In this document: one piece after another, positions 3,440 to 64,000 of the stretch | How positions within the stretch are numbered: position 1 is the first letter of the stretch | How the letters are laid out: the number at the start of each line of letters is the position of its first letter | Virus record (IMG/VR): IMGVR_UViG_3300046513_000348 | Coordinates: 62,001-126,000 of that record | DNA: 64,000 bases | Direction: 5' to 3' (one strand) | Program-made: the position numbers and the translations under genes | Notes under the pieces: model-generated | Told to the model about the DNA's origin: nothing | The model's database searches: none | What the model saw: only the letters and a program-made list of their open reading frames with translations

Positions 3440-3799
3440 TTACTCGTATACCTCGAACTTAAGAGACATGCTCGTCGTGTGCTTTATCAAATATCGGAAG
3501 TGCAAGTGGTAGGGAGTTCTACCCGTTTGGTGTATCTCCCAGACAATCTTTCCACGCACGTCCAATAAGAACCTAAACAGCCGAGCTTTTTGTTCGTCGG
3601 TATACGGCTCGTGGTGACCCTGATACCAGGCATCACCATAGACCATGTCACGAATGTGAGTCTGATCTCGAGCGCTTCCATTGATCCCGCTACATAAACA
3701 ATCCAGGGCATCATCATAATCAACGATCCCGAATTCCAACGTAAAGAACCGACGAAACATTTTCAAAAGCGGGATTTTGTTGATGATGAGGATTGCCAT
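3440..3799 (-). CDS. Hypothetical protein (possible paralog-array member)
   Basis: 119 aa, 1 nt from the upstream gene. Confidence 0.7.
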   Translation of the reverse strand: MAILIINKIPLLKMFRRFFTLEFGIVDYDDALDCLCSGINGSARDQTHIRDMVYGDAWYQGHHEPYTDEQKARLFRFLLDVRGKIVWEIHQTGRTPYHLHFRYLIKHTTSMSLKFEVYE

Positions 3800-3800
3800 T

Positions 3801-4232
3801 TTAGAAGGATACTTCCATTGCCAAAGCTTTTGCAGGAGTCCAGTTCATGGACTTAGCACTGATTGCCAGATCACCATGCGTATCGTACAGCATGTGCATT
3901 ACGCGATAGACGAACGTATCGATCGCTTGTGCCGCATGGGCCAGGTTCATCACCTTGTAACTATCGGCAGACATGCCGTTGATCCAGGAACCAGAGATAC
4001 GCGCCATGGCGTCCTCTTCTTTACGGTTCCAGTTGTCCATTGCATACATCAGATCGTTCATGATGTAACGATGGCGTGTTTCCGCATCCATCTCGCGCTG
4101 AGTTGCGAGTACGCATGATTCGATAAAACCGTAGACCTCGCCCGGGTAGAAGTAAAAGTCCTCAGCCTTCGTTCCCAGCGCCTGGAAAACAGGTTTGAAG
4201 TCTACGATGTATTTACTAGAAGAAATAGCCAC
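3801..4232 (-). CDS. Hypothetical protein (possible paralog-array member)
   Basis: 143 aa, GTG start with GAGGA Shine-Dalgarno. Confidence 0.75.
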   Translation of the reverse strand: MAISSSKYIVDFKPVFQALGTKAEDFYFYPGEVYGFIESCVLATQREMDAETRHRYIMNDLMYAMDNWNRKEEDAMARISGSWINGMSADSYKVMNLAHAAQAIDTFVYRVMHMLYDTHGDLAISAKSMNWTPAKALAMEVSF

Positions 4233-7262: not shown

Positions 7263-8075
7263 ATGCATGCTGGTGGTGCAGTTGAGAAGGCTCTGAGTGA
7301 AATCAAATACCAGATTCCGGAAGAGATCTTGGATTTGGTCTTCATTAAGAAAGCCTATACCTACCGCGACAGGCCTACCAACCTGGATCGCGAAATCATC
7401 AAAAAGGTTATCGGTCCCCGTGTCATGGTGGACTGCAACCTGTTGGGTGGCGTGGACTACATTGTCCCGCTGCTTGACATCTATCGCGAAACCACTGAAG
7501 AGTGGATGGCGATTTACCGGATCCCGAAAGAGTTCACGGACAATCGAAGCATCATGTCGATCCTCGGTATCATGTACATCAACCCTTACATGGTCTCGGC
7601 TCCTGCCGGTCAGAACGTACAAGGCTGGTCGCATGTGATGGCAACTTCCCAGGCCGTCCTGGATGCGATGTCGCCTATCCCGAACTTCACTTCTTCGGAA
7701 GTATCGCTGGAAGGTGAGAACACGATCCTCGTTCGCGATGCCCGTGTACTGCCGCAGTTCAGCTATGCTCGATGCATTCTGTCGTACGACGAGTACATGA
7801 GCAACATCAATCCTCGCTCGTATATAGCTTTCTCGAAGATGTGCGTACTTGCAGTCAAGTCGTTCATCTGGAAGAACCGCGTCATTCCAATGGACAAAGG
7901 CGAAATGACCGCTGGCGTTACGCTGGGTGCGATCAAGGAAGTCATCGACGAATACCGCGATGCGGAAGAACAATACCAGGACTATCGCATGAACACGATG
8001 CGTAAAGTTCTGATGATGAATGACGATGTGCAGAAGCGTCGTCTCATTACCCGCATCGTTGGCGGCTACCGATAG
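7263..8075 (+). CDS. Conserved phiKZ-like hypothetical protein
   Basis: 270 aa, GAGGA Shine-Dalgarno, phage-typical codon usage, followed by a terminator. Confidence 0.8.
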   Translation: MHAGGAVEKALSEIKYQIPEEILDLVFIKKAYTYRDRPTNLDREIIKKVIGPRVMVDCNLLGGVDYIVPLLDIYRETTEEWMAIYRIPKEFTDNRSIMSILGIMYINPYMVSAPAGQNVQGWSHVMATSQAVLDAMSPIPNFTSSEVSLEGENTILVRDARVLPQFSYARCILSYDEYMSNINPRSYIAFSKMCVLAVKSFIWKNRVIPMDKGEMTAGVTLGAIKEVIDEYRDAEEQYQDYRMNTMRKVLMMNDDVQKRRLITRIVGGYR

Positions 8076-8085
8076 CAAACAAAAG

Positions 8086-8118
8086 TATACTCCAGGCCGC
8101 AAGGCCTGGAGTATATGC
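8086..8118. terminator. Bidirectional hairpin, family 1
   Basis: tatactccaggcc-gcaa-ggcctggagtata plus TATGC, between convergent genes. Confidence 0.8.
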
Positions 8119-8126
8119 CGCATGCT

Positions 8127-8897
8127 TTATTGAAACTGACCTGGGTTGGCGTAAGGTGCCGGATAAACAGAGAAGTCTCCGTTGTATCGACCAACGCCTT
8201 TAGTTATGCGAACCTCATCAACGTAGCCGTTCATGATGTAATTCCACTGGGTATCAGTAAGAAGTCGACCCAAACGTAGGGGGCCGCCAGATGTAACTGT
8301 CTTTCCAGTCGAGAAGCTGTTCATCGTCAGAGGTAGGCTTTTGCCATTGACTAGCAAATAGAACGAGTTTCCGACTCGACTCACTGCGACGTGATACCAT
8401 TTGCCGATCTTAATTGACCCGGCAGCGGTTTTGAGGGTAAAAGCATTGGAACCATCTTGCCAGGCATTGTCGAAAACAAGAGTTCCATCATTCGAAACGA
8501 AAAGCGCCCATGCAGCAACGCCACCGGTGCTACCGCTGGTACCGCTTCCAGTAATGAAACAATTTTGCCCATATTGGGAATTTAGGGCTACGAAGTAAAC
8601 ATACGCCTCGATCGTGAAATCACCGGTACCAAAGCTATAGCCGGGTCGATTGATGCCATACGCATAACCGCCGCTTCCGTCGAAGTATGCACTGGTCGGA
8701 CCAAAACGTTTCTGAGCCGAACTCAACATCGCTGGACTAACGACGTTGAGCTGATAGGAATTTATGGTGTCGACGAATGCGGAAGATCCGCCGGCGGTAT
8801 CCATGTGCATCAACAAACTGACATTGCTGATGTATGGGTCAGCGATCGGCGGGTATTCAACGTTTCCGTTTCTCCGGCCCATTAAGATTTCATGCAT
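8127..8897 (-). CDS. LamG/concanavalin A-like lectin-fold protein (possible virion decoration or adhesin)
   Basis: VSLLMHMD, FGTGDFTIEAYVY, WYHVAVSR, YLLVNG, GYVDEVRITKG. Confidence 0.85.
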   Translation of the reverse strand: MHEILMGRRNGNVEYPPIADPYISNVSLLMHMDTAGGSSAFVDTINSYQLNVVSPAMLSSAQKRFGPTSAYFDGSGGYAYGINRPGYSFGTGDFTIEAYVYFVALNSQYGQNCFITGSGTSGSTGGVAAWALFVSNDGTLVFDNAWQDGSNAFTLKTAAGSIKIGKWYHVAVSRVGNSFYLLVNGKSLPLTMNSFSTGKTVTSGGPLRLGRLLTDTQWNYIMNGYVDEVRITKGVGRYNGDFSVYPAPYANPGQFQ

Positions 8898-8949: not shown

Positions 8950-8979
8950 CATACACTCCTGGCGTTTGCCAGGAGTGTA
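8950..8979 (-). terminator. Hairpin, family 1
   Basis: tacactcctggc-gttt-gccaggagtgta with CATA at 8950. Confidence 0.75.
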
Positions 8980-46864: not shown

Positions 46865-46899
46865 GCATATACTCCTGGCCGCGAGGCCAGGAGTATATG
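46865..46899. terminator. Bidirectional hairpin, family 1, TATG on both sides
   Basis: catatactcctggcc-gcga-ggccaggagtatatg. Confidence 0.85.
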
Positions 46900-46906
46900 T
46901 TTGTGT

Positions 46907-48157
46907 TTACCAGAAGTCGCCACTGCCGCCGGTCAGAATACCCTCTTTGTCCAGACCACTCAGGATTGAACCTTTGTCTGGATTGCTGAGGATAGCATTC
47001 TTATCGGAGTTACTCAGGATCGCGTTCTTGTCCGAGTTGGCAAGAATCTCACGCTTTGCTTGTTCCATGTCGATACGTGGATCAGCATCGCGCAGAATCG
47101 CATTACTTGCCGACGAAGCCGTCGACATTGGGTAACGACTCTTGATTGATTCAGTCACCGTTTTCGGTTCAGGGAAAGCGTCCACTGCAGCGTACCAGCG
47201 GGTACTCGGATCATTGGACATCTTGGCACCGTTGGAGAACAGATCTTTCGTTTCTTTGGAAGCGCCCATCAGACAAGTCAGATCGTTCATGGAAGTGGAC
47301 GAGCCGGCTGGTTGGAAAGAAGACTTATTCCAGTTGGGATCGATCTTCGAATAGGCGCCTTGATACTCGTAGAACTGACCGAGCGTTTGGGTGCCCGGGA
47401 CAGCTACTTTCGTATTGGCCGTCAATTTCTTAACTGCCGAGGAATCCATCATTCCGACGACACCAGTGCCCAGATGGTCAGCCATCGAAGACACCGACAG
47501 ATAGTCGCCGCGCTTCAGTGCGCCAGGCAGAGAAGTACTCGCCATGTTGTACAGGACATTACCCTTATTGGCAAGGGTCGTGGAATCCCTCACAGCGCCT
47601 GCAACGATACCGAACGAATTGGAGATACCCGCCATGCTAGCTTGATCGACCACCTGCCCGTAGATCTTCCCCAACGAACCATTGGGAGACAGAAGAACAC
47701 TCGTCTTACCCGTGATAGCGTTCAACGTGTTCGTAATACCACGCAGGTCTTTCAGGTTACCGCTCTTAACGGCCTTGACGAGTCCGTCTACTTGAGCGTA
47801 TGCCTGGGTTGCGGTCTTGAGTGCATTGCCGGCACTCTTGACCATCCCGGCTGCCGACTTGACACTCTTGAGCGTATCGCCAATCAGCGATTTCGCTTTT
47901 GATGCAGTGGAAGGCAAGGAGCCATCGAGTTGGTCCTTGAGACTTGCCGCCGCTTCGTTAGTTGGTCCTGCGAGTTTTTGGCCCGAGGTGAATTTACTCA
48001 GGAAGCTGAACTGGTCGTACAGATCGGTGCTGGTGCCAGTGATGTCCTGATAGCTGTTAACAGCCTCGGGAGTTGTCTTCTGGTATACGTCCGCAACGAT
48101 TGTTTCTTCGTCTGGTTTCCTGGCAAAGATACTCTTCGCGAGTTGGGCATTAGCCAT
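46907..48157 (-). CDS. Hypothetical (probable virion) protein with C-terminal 9-aa repeats
   Basis: 416 aa, Ala/Ser-rich. Confidence 0.75.
   Translation of the reverse strand: MANAQLAKSIFARKPDEETIVADVYQKTTPEAVNSYQDITGTSTDLYDQFSFLSKFTSGQKLAGPTNEAAASLKDQLDGSLPSTASKAKSLIGDTLKSVKSAAGMVKSAGNALKTATQAYAQVDGLVKAVKSGNLKDLRGITNTLNAITGKTSVLLSPNGSLGKIYGQVVDQASMAGISNSFGIVAGAVRDSTTLANKGNVLYNMASTSLPGALKRGDYLSVSSMADHLGTGVVGMMDSSAVKKLTANTKVAVPGTQTLGQFYEYQGAYSKIDPNWNKSSFQPAGSSTSMNDLTCLMGASKETKDLFSNGAKMSNDPSTRWYAAVDAFPEPKTVTESIKSRYPMSTASSASNAILRDADPRIDMEQAKREILANSDKNAILSNSDKNAILSNPDKGSILSGLDKEGILTGGSGDFW
46931..47047 (-). repeat. Degenerate 27-bp (9-aa) tandem repeat, about 4.5 copies
   Basis: ILANSDKNA ILSNSDKNA ILSNPDKGS ILSGLDKEG ILTG. 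Confidence 0.8.
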
Positions 48158-58745: not shown

Positions 58746-60047
58746 ATGGACATTATCAAAGGCTTTGCTCTGAATCGCAATTTCATCAATAACACCCCAG
58801 GTGTTGTTGCTGATATTGGCGAGTTGTCGACTAAGGGCTTCACGTTCGTCAAGGAACCCCGCGTTTATTCCTCGCAAACATATCCCACAATATCACTGGT
58901 GCACTTCCCTTCGCCGGGTAGTGGTGTGGGCACGTCCGCTTCGATTCCGGATGCCCAGAAAGACCATATCCTGAAGGTCATCAACAAGATTTACGAGAAG
59001 TCGGCCAGTGCAACCATCGTGTTCGCTCCGGGCGCTTTCATCGAATACCTGTTGGCTCAGATGGGTAATGAAGTCGCCGACATCACCGTCGGAGGCGTCG
59101 TTGCCAATGGCAACTACTCGATCATCGAATGGATCCAATGGCGTAACACGGCAGGTAGCGCCGGTAACGTCAACAAGATCTGGTTCTCGAATGCGGCATT
59201 CGAAGGCCAGTTCGACGAATACGAAATCACGGTCATTCCGCCGTTCCTGCCCCCGAATCAGTTCTTCGGCCAGCCTGCTGAAGTCAAGTATCTCCTGGGC
59301 AACCTGAGCTACTCGCAGGAAGTGGAAAAGATTCAGGACGCCCGCGGCAAATCGTCCGAGACCATCCTCTGGGGTAATACGTACAACTACGTGAACCCAG
59401 TGAATCAGAATGACAAGACGCCTGCGAAGTTCACCTGCCTGATCTACGGTATGGCAGGCAACAACATCGACCTGATCAAGGACGCGATCGTTCAGTACCT
59501 GCTGGCGAACTCGACCTACACTCGTGACCAGTGGAAGAACATCCTGCCGGATCTTTTTCTGCGGACTGAATTCCTGATCTTCCCGCAGTGGGAACGTATG
59601 GCGATCGAGAATGTGGTCGGCAGCAACAACGGCATCTTCTCGCCGGTCGTTGACCTGACCGCGATCATGAACAAGCTGGTGGTCGAATCGGTCGAATACG
59701 ACGAGACTCACGTCCGCACCAACGGCCAGGCATTTACCTTCCCGTACATGTCGGTTGCCGCTACCTCGATCGGTCACATCGAAAACCGCGATGGCAAGAA
59801 GAAAATCACGGATTGGTATCCGGACTACTTCTTCGTGAACAATACGAACGCCGACTTCAACCGCATGTCGCTCACCACTCAGGAATGGGTACTGATGATC
59901 ATGGAAATGTTGAAGATCGCCCGCGACCTGACCACGAGCTCCACGATCCCGCAGGGTTACTCCCGCGTTAAACGTGGCACCCGCCTCTTCCTGGCCAAGA
60001 GCCACAAGAGCGTCCAATACCTCGTGGCAGCGCCTGGTACCTACTAA
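58746..60047 (+). CDS. Virion structural protein (phiKZ-like)
   Basis: 433 aa; IKGF, GELS, KIWFS...F..QFDEYEI, W..ILPDLF.RTEF. Confidence 0.7.
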   Translation: MDIIKGFALNRNFINNTPGVVADIGELSTKGFTFVKEPRVYSSQTYPTISLVHFPSPGSGVGTSASIPDAQKDHILKVINKIYEKSASATIVFAPGAFIEYLLAQMGNEVADITVGGVVANGNYSIIEWIQWRNTAGSAGNVNKIWFSNAAFEGQFDEYEITVIPPFLPPNQFFGQPAEVKYLLGNLSYSQEVEKIQDARGKSSETILWGNTYNYVNPVNQNDKTPAKFTCLIYGMAGNNIDLIKDAIVQYLLANSTYTRDQWKNILPDLFLRTEFLIFPQWERMAIENVVGSNNGIFSPVVDLTAIMNKLVVESVEYDETHVRTNGQAFTFPYMSVAATSIGHIENRDGKKKITDWYPDYFFVNNTNADFNRMSLTTQEWVLMIMEMLKIARDLTTSSTIPQGYSRVKRGTRLFLAKSHKSVQYLVAAPGTY

Positions 60048-60685
60048 TGGCGAACGAACTCTTGCCATCGATTGGCATGTCGGGGCAATGGAAACTCAAA
60101 GCCCCGTTTGACACCAAGATCGTTGCGAACCTCACCTACACTTGTAAAGAAGTCCGCAAGCTGGGTGCGATGATTGCAGCGGGTGTCGATGCCTTCGAAG
60201 AATTCTACGTTCCAAACGAAATCACTCGTGACGTGTACGACCAACACGTCGCTAGCGATATCTCGGTCATCACTCTGTCCTCTTCGTCTGGCAACTGGAT
60301 TAATGTCCCGACGCCTTACCTGGATGGCTGGCCCAATGCTAACGTAATCCCTTACGTTGTCGTTGGTCTGATCGCTGATATCGGTGCATTACCCAACACG
60401 ATTGATCCGACATTCCTTGCCGAGAAGGTGAAGAACACGATCATGAGTTCCCTGGGTCATGAACCCCAGATCACTTTCGTTGCTCTGTCGGAAGTCACCA
60501 ACATGCCTTTCGATGAGCACGAAGCTCTGGAGAATCTCCGTATGTCGAACATCGAGGACGACAACACGGATTACTCCCGCCGTATCAAAGCCGAAGCTGA
60601 CCTGGCAAAAGCGCGCGCAGAAATTGCCGCACTCCAGCAGTTCATCATCGACTCGGGTGTACCAATTCCAGTTGTGACCGGATAA
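60047..60685 (+). CDS. Conserved phiKZ-like hypothetical/virion protein
   Basis: 212 aa, TAATG overlap, C-terminal coiled coil. Confidence 0.75.
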   Translation: MANELLPSIGMSGQWKLKAPFDTKIVANLTYTCKEVRKLGAMIAAGVDAFEEFYVPNEITRDVYDQHVASDISVITLSSSSGNWINVPTPYLDGWPNANVIPYVVVGLIADIGALPNTIDPTFLAEKVKNTIMSSLGHEPQITFVALSEVTNMPFDEHEALENLRMSNIEDDNTDYSRRIKAEADLAKARAEIAALQQFIIDSGVPIPVVTG

Positions 60686-60691
60686 ACAAAA

Positions 60692-60731
60692 GACATACCT
60701 ATCCTGCCCTCGCGGGCAGGATAGGATTATG
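60692..60731. terminator. Bidirectional hairpin, family 2, TATG on both sides
   Basis: cctatcctgccc-tcgc-gggcaggatagg. Confidence 0.85.
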
Positions 60732-60736
60732 TTCGT

Positions 60737-61513
60737 TTAGTACAGAGTCGAGATTGGAGTAAAGTCAGAAACAGCCAAGCACTTGTTATACAAGCGAATT
60801 CGATCCATATTACCGTTGATGCCAGAATAGCCAGGGCCGCCATTTCGAGCATCGTAATAATTACCGATGTACAGGTTCGAACCGAAGCCGATTGCCGAGT
60901 TATAAATCTCAGTCGATGTTCCAACAAGCTTACCTCCCAAGAAGAGGTAGACCTTGCCGTCCTTACGGCCAACGGCATGATGCTGCCATAAACCATTCGC
61001 AGCACGCATGGTTGCCTTGACGAGTGTCCTGGACGAAGTGCCGCCGTCAGTAACGTTCAAGATCGGATAGAGATCCGACAGGCCCCAGAAACTCATACCG
61101 CCTGCGGCAGTAAAGGCACCGTAAGAAAGGAAGACGTTATTGCCGCCGGTGAATGTATAGTTGCCCTGACCGTTGCAGAACGCCCAGGTTTCGAACCAGA
61201 AGTCCCCAGGGAAATTCAGTTCGGCGGATCGTGGCGTATACAGACTACCACAAGCTGACGAAGGCTGTTGCGACTGAAGGAAGCTCTGCGTACCGTTGAT
61301 TTTTCGTGCAGTCGACAAACTAACGTCAGCAGCCTGGATCGTTCCGTAGGTACGTGCCGTATTAACGGAGTCCTTCCAGGAGGCTCCTTCAAAGTCCATC
61401 GCCAGGACAGCTCCGCTGTCGCCGTACGAAAAGCCCTTCTTTTTCAAAAGGTTAGATTCAAGCATAGAGTATTGCTCCTTAGATTTCATAGGATTTCGCG
61501 TAAATACGGACAT
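60737..61513 (-). CDS. LamG/concanavalin A-like lectin-fold protein
   Basis: VLAMDFEG, GDFWFETW, WQHHAVGR, YLFLGG, GNMDRIRLY. Confidence 0.8.
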   Translation of the reverse strand: MSVFTRNPMKSKEQYSMLESNLLKKKGFSYGDSGAVLAMDFEGASWKDSVNTARTYGTIQAADVSLSTARKINGTQSFLQSQQPSSACGSLYTPRSAELNFPGDFWFETWAFCNGQGNYTFTGGNNVFLSYGAFTAAGGMSFWGLSDLYPILNVTDGGTSSRTLVKATMRAANGLWQHHAVGRKDGKVYLFLGGKLVGTSTEIYNSAIGFGSNLYIGNYYDARNGGPGYSGINGNMDRIRLYNKCLAVSDFTPISTLY

Positions 61514-61542
61514 AACCATCCTACCCTTTCGGGTAGGATGGA
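61509..61542 (-). terminator. Hairpin, family 2 (GAAA loop on minus), with TATG
   Basis: ccatcctaccc-tttc-gggtaggatgg after the sbcC stop codon. Confidence 0.8.
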
Positions 61543-61548
61543 AACGTG

Positions 61549-64000
61549 TCAGTTTAACGTGACGTGTTCATTGAACACCGTATTCGATGGCAGCATCAGA
61601 TTGTCAGTACTGAGCACGCAGGTTTGTGCCAGACTACTCAATGCGCCGTGGTTCGATTCGTAGTGGGAGACCATGAAGATCTGACCATACGCATCTTCGT
61701 CGATCAGCTTCTTGATGAAGTAAATCGCACGTTCACGGTGCACGTCGTCGAATGCTGCTTCGAACTCGTCAAGGAACAACGGAATATGCCCCAAACCCAG
61801 TTGCCTCAAAGCACAGATCCGAAACGCGAAGTTGAAAATGTCGACGATCGATTCCGATCCCTCGTTCACATCCTTCTTCGGTTTCTCGCCCTTGTTCATC
61901 GCAAACGGGAACTTGTAATCCATATCCGCTTGGCCATCCTCCATGATGAACGGAAGGATTTCCAACGGGTATGACCAGACCGATCCGACCACTCGGTTCA
62001 TACGTGAAACGAAGACGTTTACGAAGCGATGAAGACCTTCCGCAATCGCCCCACTCGTCGGCGATAATGCAATGTGTGCCATCTTCGCCACTCGTTCGTT
62101 CATGATTGCTTCGTCCAGCTGATACTGGATCTCGTCCACGATCTGCTGCTGGCTGGTCAGTTGCGCTAATGCATCTTCCTTCCGTGCCAGTTGAGTTTGA
62201 AGGGAAAGGATCAGTTGCCACAAGGCCTCCTGGAAACGGCTATACACATAGCCCTTGATGTGATCTTGGTGAACGCCATGTGCACTGAGCATCTTTTCGT
62301 GCAGTGCTGCAACACGATTGCTCTGTTGGATCAGGTTCTCGACGTCGGCCAGTTCTTCCGTCAGGCCTTTCAGCTTACGAGTCTGAACGCCCATCTTCTC
62401 TTCGATACCAGACATTTCGGTTTCGATGGATTCGAGAGTATCAGCGTCGAGATTCTTTTTGAGCTCGATCTGTTCTTGCGCAGATTCCAAGATCTTCTTC
62501 TGCTTGGCGATCTCGACTTGATGCTCGATGTCGCTTTGCATAGTGTAAAGCTCGGCTGCCACACTGCCCGGATATTGTATCAGGCGATTGTTCTGCGTGA
62601 TCTCGTTAAAGTAAGCACGAAGGTTCGGAGCGGAACGCATCATGTTGATGACGTTGCGATAGGCGTCAGCATACTCGGTGTATTCCGCCATGTACTTCGA
62701 CTCATCGCTGATCCGCTGGACCAGATTGTCCGAATCTTCCTTCAACTGAGCCAATACCGTTTCGGCTTTCTTGATATCGTCTTCCGACGCTTTCGTGGTC
62801 CAGGAATGCGAGCATTGCGGGCAAGTGATCGAATCTTTCTGGACGTGATCGCGACGATGCTCGATATCGGCATTTAAACGCGATATGCGGGCCTGTAGGG
62901 CCGTGTACTGGCCCGAATGCTGAGTGAGTCGAGCCTGAGCCATCTCGGCCTTCTCGCGCGTATAAACACCGTCGTTGGAAGGCAGGCTAGAAATCTTGTC
63001 GTAGAGCTCGTGATAGATTTCTTTCAGCGTAGCCGCCATCTGGACCGCGTCGAACTCGATCCGGACATTAGGAAGAGCAATGAAGGTCTCTTCATAAGCG
63101 ATGGTTTCCTTAGCCGTGGTTACCTTGGCTTGGAGTTCAGCCAGAGATTCTGTACCGGCCTTCACCAGCATGTCATACTTCTTCTTGACACGGGAGTGCT
63201 CGGTGTACAGGTGCTGCTGCATTTGTTGTGCAGCAGCGATCTCGATCTTGATCACATCACGGCAGTCGAGCAGATCCTGATGGTTATCATGACCCGACGA
63301 AGTAATCAGTTCGGTATTGAGCCGATCGATCTCGTTACCGTAACGATCCAGGTCATGCCAGTTCGATTCCAACACTTGCAATACTTCCGGACCTTTCTTG
63401 GCCTCAGCATTGCGCATGTCGTAGATCTCACCAATCAGGGCCTTGATATCGTAGACTTCGTTGTTCAGGGTCTTGATGACGTTTGCATCTGCCAGCTTGA
63501 TGCGTTCATCCACCAGACGCTTCTGCAAGCGCTTGATTGCGCCCTGTGCGTCACGGTGTGCTTCCTGGAGCTTCTTGTAGATACTCATGGCGTAGGTGAA
63601 GTCGGTATCGGCCAGTCGAACCAGCCAGTAACGACGACGACCAGGACTCATGGTGGTCAGGAGTTCTTTGCCCAATGCCAGAGCACGGATTTCATTGGTG
63701 ATGTGGAAATGCTCTTCGACCAGAGCACGGTACATCTCGATCTTACCGTCACCATTCATCTCCACGCCATCGCACATAAAGCTATGATGAGGCTTCGGCC
63801 CTTCAAATGACGACGACAGTTCGTAGAACTTGCCGTTGTATTGGATGTCGATTTCTTTGCGACCATTGATACCAAAGTCATCTTTATCGGCAGGCAGTGG
63901 CCACATCTCGTTCATGAGGGAGCTCTTACCGCTACCGTTCGTTCCCAGAACCATCTGGAGAATGTACAGCAAATCGGGCGTGTACAGGAAGCGTTTGATT
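61549..64000 (-). CDS. sbcC: SbcC/Rad50 SMC-like ATPase (phiKZ gp165-like); 5' end lies beyond the window end
   Basis: Walker A GTNGSGKSS, long coiled coils, zinc hook CPQC, Walker B LFLDEF, H-loop MVSH; frame open to the window edge. Confidence 0.9.
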   Translation of the reverse strand, partial: IKRFLYTPDLLYILQMVLGTNGSGKSSLMNEMWPLPADKDDFGINGRKEIDIQYNGKFYELSSSFEGPKPHHSFMCDGVEMNGDGKIEMYRALVEEHFHITNEIRALALGKELLTTMSPGRRRYWLVRLADTDFTYAMSIYKKLQEAHRDAQGAIKRLQKRLVDERIKLADANVIKTLNNEVYDIKALIGEIYDMRNAEAKKGPEVLQVLESNWHDLDRYGNEIDRLNTELITSSGHDNHQDLLDCRDVIKIEIAAAQQMQQHLYTEHSRVKKKYDMLVKAGTESLAELQAKVTTAKETIAYEETFIALPNVRIEFDAVQMAATLKEIYHELYDKISSLPSNDGVYTREKAEMAQARLTQHSGQYTALQARISRLNADIEHRRDHVQKDSITCPQCSHSWTTKASEDDIKKAETVLAQLKEDSDNLVQRISDESKYMAEYTEYADAYRNVINMMRSAPNLRAYFNEITQNNRLIQYPGSVAAELYTMQSDIEHQVEIAKQKKILESAQEQIELKKNLDADTLESIETEMSGIEEKMGVQTRKLKGLTEELADVENLIQQSNRVAALHEKMLSAHGVHQDHIKGYVYSRFQEALWQLILSLQTQLARKEDALAQLTSQQQIVDEIQYQLDEAIMNERVAKMAHIALSPTSGAIAEGLHRFVNVFVSRMNRVVGSVWSYPLEILPFIMEDGQADMDYKFPFAMNKGEKPKKDVNEGSESIVDIFNFAFRICALRQLGLGHIPLFLDEFEAAFDDVHRERAIYFIKKLIDEDAYGQIFMVSHYESNHGALSSLAQTCVLSTDNLMLPSNTVFNEHVTLN

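What the first reader, a model, noticed from the sequence alone, without database searches (positions are those of the whole stretch)
60692..61542. LamG gene bracketed by a direct repeat made of the terminator hairpin itself (cassette-like unit)
Seen: the two flanks, 60692-60726 gacata-cctatcctgccctcgcgggcaggatagga and 61509-61542 gacataacc-atcctaccctttcgggtaggat-gga, align at 29 of 36 columns. The stem differences are compensatory (a G-C to A-T swap and a paired T/A indel). The other LamG gene (8127-8897) is likewise bracketed by two hairpins of a different family (ta.actcc.ggc-loop-gcc.ggagt.ta at 8086 and 8952). Inference: accessory genes may be gained, lost or shuffled by recombination between related hairpins, analogous to integron attC cassettes or T4 promoter/stem-loop modules, possibly using the phage UvsX or SbcCD.
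Basis: partly seen in the sequence, partly recalled or inferred. Interest (0 to 1): 0.75.

Follow-up and report, generated by a model that had tools for sequence, protein, structure and literature searches.

The report
LamG gene between twin terminator hairpins
A small lectin-like accessory gene of a giant soil phage sits between two look-alike terminator hairpins, and close relatives lacking the gene have one such hairpin in its place, so it is a removable module of a kind already known in other phages.

Summary
Hairpin L (60698-60725) and hairpin R (61516-61541) are perfect 12- and 11-bp tetraloop stems that align at 29 of 36 columns.

- **What the hairpins are.** They are two of 54 such hairpins in a 218.7-kb phiKZ-like phage. 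The hairpins behave as strand-oriented intrinsic terminators with a shared TATG tail, which explains the common 'gacata' flank.
- **How alike the pair is.** It ranks in the top 2-5% of 1,431 hairpin pairs. Adjacent hairpins genome-wide are no more alike than random pairs (p=0.39).
- **Relatives.** Both hairpins are kept in three metagenomic relatives (91, 80 and 70% nucleotide identity). Phages about 91% identical to the third lack LamG and carry one hairpin with L's left flank and R's stem and right flank.
- **Reading.** LamG is a moron-like presence/absence module bounded by the hairpins. All four LamG loci share one layout, at convergent junctions behind a hairpin.
- **Limits.** The genome has no integrase, so the integron analogy fails. 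The unit works like T4 PeSL modules, but no promoter half was found in the repeat. Between RSL2 and FLC6 only 10 of 38 indels touch a hairpin. Selection for a retained terminator could alone place viable breakpoints there.

The parts
60047..60685 (+). Left neighbour: DUF7194 gene (212 aa). It converges on LamG.
   Evidence: PF23824, E 1.4e-55. Conserved in all relatives.
60688..60739 (.). Hairpin element L. The stem-loop is 60698-60725 (12 bp, loop tcgc), with an ACATA foot and a TATG tail on both strands. It is a bidirectional terminator for DUF7194 (+) and LamG (-).
   Evidence: (terminator-like on both strands). Orthologous hairpins are present in L013, L014 and L015.
60737..61465 (-). LamG / concanavalin-A-like accessory gene (242 aa). 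Its N-terminus MLESNLLKKK is shared by the paralogue family.
   Evidence: Pfam PF13385. PHROG matches to LamG-type domains inside large baseplate-wedge and virion proteins. Homologues at 76, 63 and 48% identity sit in the same slot. Low GC3 and codon score.
61475..61480 (-). Shine-Dalgarno sequence AAGGAG of LamG.
   Evidence: Read from the sequence; aligned in relatives.
61487..61490 (-). TATG, invariant in four relatives, 6 nt upstream of the ribosome-binding site in the window. Candidate phiKZ-type late promoter core for LamG (inferred).
   Evidence: Alignment A4. The phiKZ late promoter consensus is TATG with +1 at the G (PMC4666361).
61509..61556 (.). Hairpin element R. The stem-loop is 61516-61541 (11 bp, loop tttc; GAAA on the minus strand), with a TATGTC tail on the minus strand. 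It is the terminator of sbcC, upstream of LamG.
   Evidence: Positional orthologues follow sbcC in every relative.
61549..64000 (-). Right neighbour: sbcC-like ATPase gene. It runs on to about 64074, beyond the window end.
   Evidence: Annotated SbcC-ATPase in RSF1, FLC6 and RsoM3USA.
8086..8115 (.). Bidirectional hairpin downstream of the second LamG gene, at a convergent junction with the + gene 7263-8075.
8127..8897 (-). Second LamG paralogue (256 aa).
8952..8979 (.). Hairpin upstream of the second LamG gene.
   Evidence: Its similarity to the 8086 hairpin is in the top 3-8% of pairs.

Best explanation
The two flanks are intrinsic transcription terminators, and LamG between them is a moron-like accessory transcription unit that is present in some relatives and absent in others.

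**The hairpins.** They belong to a genome-wide set of 54 hairpins with stems of 10 bp or more. Members share a long perfect G+C-clamped stem, a tetraloop, and an ACATA foot with a TATG, T-rich tail. Both hairpins end minus-strand genes: R ends sbcC and L ends LamG. L also ends the converging DUF7194 gene. Their common orientation is why they read as a direct repeat with the same 'gacata' flank.

**The gene.** LamG sits at the tip of a leftward operon at a convergent junction. It is insulated by a terminator on each side. It is probably driven by its own TATG promoter core 6 nt upstream of its ribosome-binding site.

**Gain and loss.** The two terminators share a 9-10 nt foot and 9-11 nt stem blocks. 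The unit can therefore be deleted, or re-inserted, by recombination or replication slippage between them. One hairpin remains, and it still terminates both converging genes. The gene has been lost or gained in this way in close relatives.

**What is shown and what is inferred.** Shown: the hairpins, their family, their association with gene ends, the conservation of both hairpins, and the presence/absence polymorphism with one chimeric hairpin. Inferred: terminator activity, the promoter, and a causal role of the repeats in the deletion.
For: **Phage and hairpin family**
- The window lies in a 218,660-bp virus record about 67-70% identical to the Chiangmaivirus phages RSL2, RSF1 and FLC6.
- The genome has 54 tetraloop hairpins with stems of 10 bp or more.
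- TATG lies at the stem end on 25 of 35 strands where a gene ends just upstream and none starts downstream. The figure is 2 of 8 for promoter-only strands and 5 of 41 for strands with neither.
- 15 of 18 convergent junctions carry such a hairpin.
- Conserved terminator motifs are known in phiKZ and 201phi2-1 (PMC11512511).

**Conservation of both hairpins**
- L013 (91% nt identity), L014 (80%) and L015 (70%) keep sbcC, hairpin R, LamG, hairpin L and DUF7194, with nearly identical stems.

**Empty sites**
- L025, L026, L027 and L030 have a 52-nt gap with one hairpin. Its left flank is L's; its stem and right flank are R's.
- In blastn, 48 nt of L025 align to both hairpin regions of L015.
- Flank identity stays at 89-94% right up to the slot.

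**DNA-level activity of the palindromes**
- At the single stem position where L and R differ by substitution, L014 has G in both hairpins and L015 has A in both. This hints at conversion between them.
- L025 and L030 are identical over the roughly 70 aligned nt except that the loops are exact reverse complements, ttgc and gcaa.

**LamG as an accessory family**
- Five Pfam-detectable paralogues and a sixth divergent one are all on the minus strand.
- All four loci have the layout + gene, hairpin, LamG gene(s), hairpin, minus gene.
- GC3 z-scores are -1.1 to -2.5 and codon scores fall in the 3rd-10th percentile.
- An invariant TATG lies just upstream of the ribosome-binding site in four relatives.
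Against: - Adjacent hairpins are not more alike than random pairs genome-wide (p=0.39). The focal pair is only in the top 2-5% of pairs.
- RSL2 and L032 keep a minus-strand LamG between dissimilar hairpins. Similarity is therefore not needed to hold the gene.
- The junction in the empty sites maps to the 3-nt ATA at the foot of the stem, inside a 9-of-10 repeat. It does not map to the longest identical stem blocks.
- The intergenic spacers are only about 10-50 nt. Almost any viable deletion must end at the hairpins and keep one terminator, so selection alone could produce this pattern.
- The tree (L025,(L015,L030)), support 92/95, does not say whether there were two losses or one gain.
- RSL2 against FLC6: only 10 of 38 indels touch a hairpin.
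- There are no transcript data. No deletion or circle junction was seen, but only assembled contigs could be laid.
Confidence: 0.6

Rival explanations
1. This is coincidence plus a selection filter. L and R are simply two members of a diffuse terminator family that happen to be alike. LamG is an ordinary fast-evolving resident gene. Its loss in some relatives came from generic illegitimate deletion. Only deletions that spare both neighbouring genes and leave one terminator between them are viable, so breakpoints appear to sit at the hairpins without the hairpins causing anything.
For: - Adjacency permutation p=0.39, and 33 of 1,431 pairs score as high as L/R.
- Other orthologous hairpins (genome 127214 and 128529) are just as conserved in L015, so conservation of L and R is not special.
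- Dissimilar brackets in RSL2 and L032.
- 28 of 38 RSL2/FLC6 indels lie away from hairpins.
- The junction has only about 3-9 nt of homology.
Against: - L/R similarity is kept in four genomes down to 70% nt identity.
- Both changes at the one differing stem position make the pair more alike. My estimate for that happening by chance is about 1 in 130, and the test is post hoc.
- Three of four LamG brackets are in the top 2-10% of similarity (joint P 0.004-0.02).
- The loop flip shows that recombination occurs within these palindromes.
Confidence: 0.27
2. L015 gained LamG by ordinary homologous recombination in the flanking genes. An empty-site phage acquired hairpin-LamG-hairpin from a co-infecting LamG-bearing relative, through crossovers inside DUF7194 and sbcC. 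The hairpins played no part.
For: - The tree places L015 inside a clade with two empty-site phages (92/95), so a single gain is the most parsimonious reading locally.
- DUF7194 shows a mosaic dip to 71-81% identity.
Against: - No divergent donor tract adjoins the slot. Identity is 89-94% in the last 100-nt windows on both sides.
- The DUF7194 dip is also present between the two empty phages.
- Homology switches exactly at the hairpin foot.
Confidence: 0.08
3. This is a site-specific cassette system. The hairpins would be attC-like sites folded from single strands and cut by a dedicated recombinase, as in integrons.
For: Only the geometry supports it: a gene between two imperfectly repeated hairpins, and an empty site with one hairpin.
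Against: - No Phage_integrase or Resolvase match in the 97%-complete genome, with positive controls working.
- The stems are perfect, with no extrahelical bases or core-site motif (read).
- The same type of hairpin ends dozens of core genes.
Confidence: 0.02

Closest known systems
PeSL (promoter-early stem-loop) regulatory cassettes of T4-type phages (Arbiol et al. 2010, PMC2839356; Comeau et al. 2014, PMC4122927)
   Same: - Repeated intergenic regulatory elements containing a terminator stem-loop flank a non-essential ORF.
- A close relative has a single element in place of the ORF. RB49 ORFan192 against phi1 is the exact counterpart of L015 against L025/L030.
- The module brings its own insulation.
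   Different: - PeSLs are about 100 nt long and contain a sigma-70-type early promoter.
- Here the conserved part is about 50 nt, no sigma-70 promoter is present, and the TATG tail goes with termination, not initiation.
- The phage is phiKZ-like with its own RNA polymerases.
- Mini-circles are untested, and sequence conservation among elements is much looser.
Morons of tailed phages (Hendrix/Juhala concept; reviewed in PMC3594210)
   Same: - A single accessory gene forms an independent unit between two genes of a conserved backbone.
- It is followed by a factor-independent terminator.
- It is present or absent among close relatives.
- Its composition is atypical.
   Different: - Morons were defined mainly in temperate phages and carry host-type promoters.
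- Here the promoter is only inferred (a TATG core).
- The gene belongs to a six-member paralogue family that sits specifically at convergent junctions.
Conserved-sequence terminators of phiKZ-like phages (201phi2-1 and phiKZ ONT-cappable-seq, PMC11512511)
   Same: Many terminators across a jumbo-phage genome share sequence motifs, some are bidirectional, and they insulate transcription units.
   Different: In the passages I read, those studies treat the motifs as regulatory elements; I saw no mention of gene gain or loss. The motif here is defined only in silico.
Integron attC gene cassettes
   Same: An imperfect hairpin-forming repeat lies on each side of a single gene.
   Different: There is no integrase, no attI or Pc, no extrahelical bases, and the hairpins are ordinary terminators of core genes.
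Deletion between short direct repeats, stimulated by palindromes, in T4 and T7, and loop inversions at hairpins in chloroplast DNA (from my own knowledge, not checked in the library)
   Same: A 9-11 nt repeat next to a strong palindrome is the classical substrate for slipped-mispairing deletion. A loop flanked by inverted arms flips by intramolecular recombination, as in L025 against L030.
   Different: No rates or intermediates were measured here.

Membership tests
Intrinsic (factor-independent) transcription terminator | Stable G+C-rich stem-loop directly after a gene end, followed by a U-rich tail on the transcribed strand. | tested here: met
   L scores as terminator-like on both strands. 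Folding energy is -26 to -28 kcal/mol. The tail of L on the minus strand is TATGTCTTTTGTTT. R's tail is weaker, TTATGTCCGTATTT. The family-wide association with gene ends is 25 of 35 against 5 of 41.
Intrinsic (factor-independent) transcription terminator | RNA 3' ends map to the element. | not testable with these tools
   No RNA run holds this phage. Only assembled DNA contigs were available.
PeSL-type mobile regulatory cassette | The repeated intergenic element contains a terminator stem-loop. | tested here: met
PeSL-type mobile regulatory cassette | The same element contains a strong sigma-70-type early promoter. | tested here: not met
   No promoter-like site at either element. The TATG tail tracks termination, not downstream gene starts. 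A separate TATG lies 26 nt beyond R.
PeSL-type mobile regulatory cassette | Indels between close relatives have one chimeric element at the empty site. | tested here: met
   L015 against L025 and L030. This holds for this locus only. In RSL2 against FLC6, 10 of 38 events touch a hairpin.
PeSL-type mobile regulatory cassette | Excised mini-circles carrying the ORF and one chimeric element. | not testable with these tools
Contigs show no joint skipping LamG.
Moron | A gene inserted between backbone genes, present or absent among close relatives. | tested here: met
Moron | Own promoter and own terminator. | tested here: inconclusive
   The terminator is supported (above). The promoter is only inferred from an invariant TATG just upstream of the ribosome-binding site and the phiKZ consensus.
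Integron gene cassette / attC | An IntI tyrosine recombinase is encoded with the array. | tested here: not met
   PF00589 has no match in the 97%-complete genome, while 14 of 14 control genomes match. PF00239 also has no match.
Integron gene cassette / attC | Imperfect palindrome with extrahelical bases and conserved core sites. | tested here: not met
   Both stems are perfect 11-12 bp duplexes without bulges.
Laminin_G_3 / concanavalin-A-like lectin fold (the gene itself) | A Pfam PF13385 match above the curated cut-off. | tested here: met
   36.8 bits against a cut-off of 27.6. Five genomic matches. PHROG matches to LamG-type domains of baseplate-wedge and virion proteins. Structure and ligand were not tested.

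The most novel reading that the evidence does not exclude
The terminator hairpins of this phiKZ-like lineage double as true recombination modules. Pairs of like hairpins excise and re-insert LamG-type, probably receptor-binding, genes as small circles or by template switching. Stem patches are converted between neighbouring hairpins and loops flip. Convergent junctions would then act as docking sites where co-infecting jumbo phages swap host-interaction modules. This would be a terminator-only analogue of the T4 PeSL system in phages that replicate inside a phage nucleus.
Probability: 0.15. Interest if true: 0.6.

Novelty: new member of a known kind. Interest (0 to 1): 0.35.

Why it matters
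Jumbo phages related to phiKZ, including the Ralstonia and Burkholderia phages studied for crop biocontrol, differ mostly in small accessory genes, and how these are exchanged is poorly documented.

This locus gives a clean natural pair: about 91% identical phages with and without one lectin-like gene, and a single hairpin at the empty site. It also gives a simple rule, that LamG-family genes sit at the tips of leftward units at convergent junctions, each behind a terminator.

It makes two things testable. The first is whether terminator repeats drive accessory-gene turnover in this lineage, as PeSLs do in T4-type phages. The second is whether these stand-alone LamG modules affect adsorption or host range.

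It does not reveal a new kind of mobile element.

Tried and rejected
- **Megablast against phage records:** no match. The distant mode was needed.
- **IMG/VR scans with DUF7194:** the single protein found nothing. The alignment found only RSF1 and RSL2.
- **JGI metagenome scan:** one truncated locus and one distant empty-site locus.
- **Read laying on four runs:** only Logan contigs. No joint skipping LamG was seen, so this says nothing about rare deletions or circles.
- **Rfam:** only sub-threshold chance matches.
- **PDB sequence search with LamG:** nothing meaningful.
- **TATG tail as the promoter half of a PeSL-like element:** rejected, because the motif tracks gene ends and not gene starts.
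- **Integron-like reading:** rejected.
- **General rule that adjacent hairpins are alike:** rejected.
- **General rule that indels end at hairpins in the sister genus:** rejected.
- **Whole-segment inversion as the cause of the swapped hairpin tops of RSL2 and FLC6:** does not fit the gene order. Left unexplained.
- **Gene caller:** my crude caller missed LamG 8127-8897 and the sixth paralogue, which I added by hand. Counts that rest on it are approximate.

Full report
**1. The observation**

- Hairpin L is 60698-60725, a perfect 12-bp stem with loop tcgc. Hairpin R is 61516-61541, a perfect 11-bp stem with loop tttc.
- The gapped alignment of 60692-60726 with 61509-61542 has 29 matches in 36 columns by my count. 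Without gaps the repeat runs 48 nt at 73% identity.
- The stem differences are one extra T:A pair and one G:C to A:T change. Both are mirrored in both arms, as they must be when both stems are perfect.
- As RNA the hairpins fold at -26 to -28 kcal/mol, z -6.4 to -7.9.
- The gene between them is 60737-61465 on the minus strand, 242 aa, Laminin_G_3.
- It converges on the DUF7194 gene 60047-60685 (+) and lies downstream of sbcC (61549 onward, minus).
- The second LamG gene, 8127-8897 (minus), is bracketed by hairpins 8086-8115 and 8952-8979, as stated.

**2. Context**

The window is bases 62001-126000 of a 218,660-bp virus record, 97% complete. The phage is about 67-70% identical in DNA to the phiKZ-related Chiangmaivirus phages of Ralstonia and Burkholderia: RSL2, RSF1, FLC6, RsoM3USA and SURPRISE13.

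**3. What the hairpins are**

- The genome holds 74 perfect hairpins with stems of 9 bp or more. 54 of them have a tetraloop and a stem of 10 bp or more.
- They share an architecture: a long stem with a G+C clamp at the loop, a tetraloop, and an ACATA foot with a TATG tail.
- TATG lies at the stem end in 29 of 54 hairpins, and on both strands in 14. The background is 1% per strand.
- The tail is tied to termination. It is present on 25 of 35 strands where a gene ends just upstream and none starts downstream. It is present on 11 of 24 where both hold, 2 of 8 where only a gene start follows, and 5 of 41 where neither holds (my own rough gene calls).
- 15 of 18 convergent junctions carry such a hairpin.
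- These are therefore strand-oriented intrinsic terminators. Conserved terminator motifs are already described in phiKZ and 201phi2-1 (PMC11512511).
- L and R both end minus-strand genes. That is why they appear as a direct repeat and share 'gacata', the complement of the TATGTC tail.

**4. Is the pair more alike than the family background?**

Only modestly.
- With 6-nt flanks the pair scores 17. The mean over 1,431 pairs is 5.2 (sd 4.1). 33 pairs score as high (2.3%), and the two are each other's top-scoring partner, L's tied with one other hairpin.
- For the hairpin alone the pair is at 4.5%.
- Adjacent hairpins are no more alike than random pairs genome-wide: 5.38 against a permuted 5.24 +/- 0.49, p=0.39.
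- For the four LamG units, three brackets fall in the top 2-10% and one does not. The joint P is 0.004-0.02, but this test was chosen after seeing the data.

**5. Relatives with the gene**

- LamG homologues at 76, 63 and 48% identity lie on contigs L013, L014 and L015.
- These contigs are 91, 80 and 70% identical to the window in DNA and have the same order: sbcC, hairpin, LamG, hairpin, DUF7194.
- Both hairpins are kept almost letter for letter. The R type is (G)CCATCCT[A/G]CCC and the L type is CCTATCCT[A/G]CCC.
- Other orthologous hairpins are equally conserved in L015, so stems in general evolve slowly here.
- At the one stem position where L and R differ by substitution, the window and L013 have G in L and A in R. 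L014 has G in both, and L015 has A in both. Both changes make the partners more alike, which hints at conversion between them.

**6. Relatives without the gene**

- DUF7194 homologues led to four contigs, L025, L026, L027 and L030, from at least three samples. In each, DUF7194 is followed after 52 nt by sbcC, with one hairpin between them.
- L025 and L030 are about 91% and 93-99% identical to L015 on both flanks. Identity stays at 89-94% in the last 100 nt before the slot.
- In blastn, 48 nt of L025 align to both hairpin regions of L015.
- In alignment A5 the single hairpin has L's left flank, ending GACATA. It then has R's stem (GCCATCC...) and R's right flank. The switch lies in the ATA at the foot of the stem, inside a 9-of-10 repeat, CAAAGAYATA.
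- More distant phages are also empty: L028 and L029 (one hairpin), the P0021 contig, and L024 (two hairpins).
The alternative, breakpoints outside the hairpins, is not seen.
- The direction of the event is open. The tree of the two conserved flanking proteins gives (L025,(L015,L030)) with support 92/95, which means one gain or two losses. The deeper presence of the same L and R hairpins in the window clade favours ancestral presence.

**7. DNA-level activity of the palindromes**

L025 and L030 are identical over the roughly 70 aligned nt except for their loops. These are ttgc and gcaa, exact reverse complements. That is a loop flip, not four point changes.

**8. The slot in the sister genus**

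- Between DUF7194 and sbcC, the Chiangmaivirus phages carry one to three genes from two families.
- One family is LamG proteins with the same N-terminal LLKKK motif. The other is a 'GxWK' family of about 170-180 aa.
- The genes occur in either orientation, although the flanks of RSL2 and FLC6 are 87-97% identical.
- Hairpin bases are conserved there, but the tops of the stems differ, with full compensation.
- RSL2 (and L032) hold a minus-strand LamG between dissimilar hairpins.

**9. Limits on generalising**

- I assembled RSL2 and FLC6 from the records and aligned them: 88% mean identity over 209 kb.
- Of 38 indel or replacement gaps of 150 nt or more, 10 have a breakpoint within 40 nt of a hairpin with a stem of 9 bp or more.
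- With 70-73 hairpins for about 224-241 genes, this is no more than intergenic positions would give.
- One three-gene indel is bracketed by two unlike hairpins and has none at the empty site.
- Hairpin-bounded turnover is therefore a feature of this slot, not a rule.

**10. The LamG family**

- Pfam finds five copies. A sixth, divergent copy lies at genome 61235-61831.
- All are on the minus strand and begin M[LH]E..L[LI]..KK.
- All four loci have the layout + gene, bidirectional hairpin, LamG gene(s), hairpin, minus gene. That is 4 of the 18 convergent junctions.
- The genes have low GC3 (z -1.1 to -2.5) and codon scores in the 3rd-10th percentile.
- They match LamG-type domains inside large proteins that PHROGs labels baseplate wedge or virion structural protein. 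A carbohydrate- or receptor-binding accessory role is plausible but untested.
- Homologues at 41-45% identity lie in other contexts in other phage contigs. Two of those three contexts have no strong hairpin beside the gene.
- At the left-hand locus, two successive hairpins are each followed by the same roughly 45-nt leader. This is a sign of tandem duplication of a whole hairpin-leader-gene unit.

**11. Expression**

Between R and the LamG start lies a TATG that is invariant in four relatives, 6 nt upstream of the ribosome-binding site in the window. TATG, with +1 at the G, is the phiKZ late promoter core (PMC4666361). An own promoter for LamG is inferred, not shown.

**12. Comparison with known systems**

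- The closest known system is the PeSL cassette of T4-type phages. There, an ORFan flanked by two composite promoter/terminator elements in one phage is replaced by one element in its close relative, and mini-circles were detected (PMC2839356; PMC4122927).
- The present unit works like that. It fails the promoter criterion, has a shorter and looser repeat, and circles are untested.
- It also fits the moron concept (PMC3594210).
- It is not an integron cassette. There is no tyrosine or serine recombinase and the stems are perfect.

**13. Verdict**

- The hairpins are terminators first.
- The LamG unit is a removable module whose edges coincide with them.
- A causal role for the repeat in gain or loss is plausible and partly supported. 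It is not separated from a selection filter that would keep one terminator between two converging genes.
- This is a further example of a known kind of phage genome plasticity, in a lineage where I did not find it described. Interest is moderate.

Noticed in passing
Genome-wide; in the window for example 60698-60739, 65214-65255 and 46866-46910: A TATG (often TATGTC or TTATGC) tail directly at the stem end marks the strand on which a gene terminates: 25 of 35 against 5 of 41. It looks like a lineage-specific terminator signature. TATG is also the phiKZ late-promoter core.
   Followed up: partly
L025:4637-4706 against L030:2050-2119: Two empty-site phages are identical over the roughly 70 aligned nt except that the hairpin loops are exact reverse complements (ttgc and gcaa). 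This is a loop flip of the palindrome. The L loop also differs between the window (tcgc) and L013 (gcaa) in a way best explained by a flip plus one change.
   Followed up: partly
L004:2450-2485 and 3820-3849; L005:2459-2484 and 3726-3753: RSL2 and FLC6 appear to have swapped hairpin tops. The FLC6 left stem equals the RSL2 right stem (CTACTGCTGGC), and the FLC6 right top equals the RSL2 left top (ACTCTCCC). A simple inversion of the slot does not fit the gene order. Unexplained.
   Followed up: partly
Genome 61150-61900 (just left of the window; L006/L012): A sixth LamG-family paralogue (61235-61831, minus, 198 aa, N-terminus MLEALLTKKK) was missed by Pfam. Its leader and that of the next LamG gene share a roughly 45-nt repeat, beginning TCGATACTGTG, directly after hairpins 61877 and 61197. 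This suggests tandem duplication of a hairpin-leader-gene unit.
   Followed up: partly
window 61493-61515 (minus) and genome 210163-210176: The 11-mer TATGTCCGTAT occurs only twice in the genome, each time as the tail of a hairpin (R, and the hairpin at genome 210177). That hairpin's stem, CAGGATAGGGC, is the inverted version of the L-type stem.
   Followed up: no
L001-L005 slot genes (for example L004:3261-3812, L003:2536-3597): A second fast-evolving gene family of 167-183 aa, with repeated G.WK motifs (phrog_25859), shares the slot with LamG in Chiangmaivirus. RSF1 has two copies and no LamG. The family is absent from the window phage's slot.
   Followed up: partly
window 60047-60685 and its orthologues in L015, L025 and L030: DUF7194 has an internal stretch of about 300-400 nt where identity among otherwise 90-98% identical phages drops to 71-81%. 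This is a mosaic patch, and it is independent of LamG presence.
   Followed up: no
All six LamG-family genes; window 61436-61465 and 8868-8897: The conserved N-terminal motif M[LH]E..L[LI]..KK is shared across paralogues that are otherwise 30% identical or less, and across the sister genus. It may be an assembly or docking signal.
   Followed up: no
L032:1-1669 and 7950-8459; L005 / FLC6 72451-73359: Relatives differ by homing-endonuclease-type insertions: an I-TevI DNA-binding domain on the RNase H gene in L032, and a GIY-YIG nuclease gp69 in FLC6. L032 also has a DHFR gene directly upstream of sbcC.
   Followed up: no
L016:4551-5279, L020:215-940, L019:4247-5729: LamG homologues at 41-45% identity lie in quite different neighbourhoods of other phage contigs: a lone plus-strand gene among minus-strand genes, or a tandem pair. 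L016/L018 and L020 have no strong hairpin beside the gene; the L019 pair is followed by one. The family has therefore moved between contexts over longer times.
   Followed up: partly
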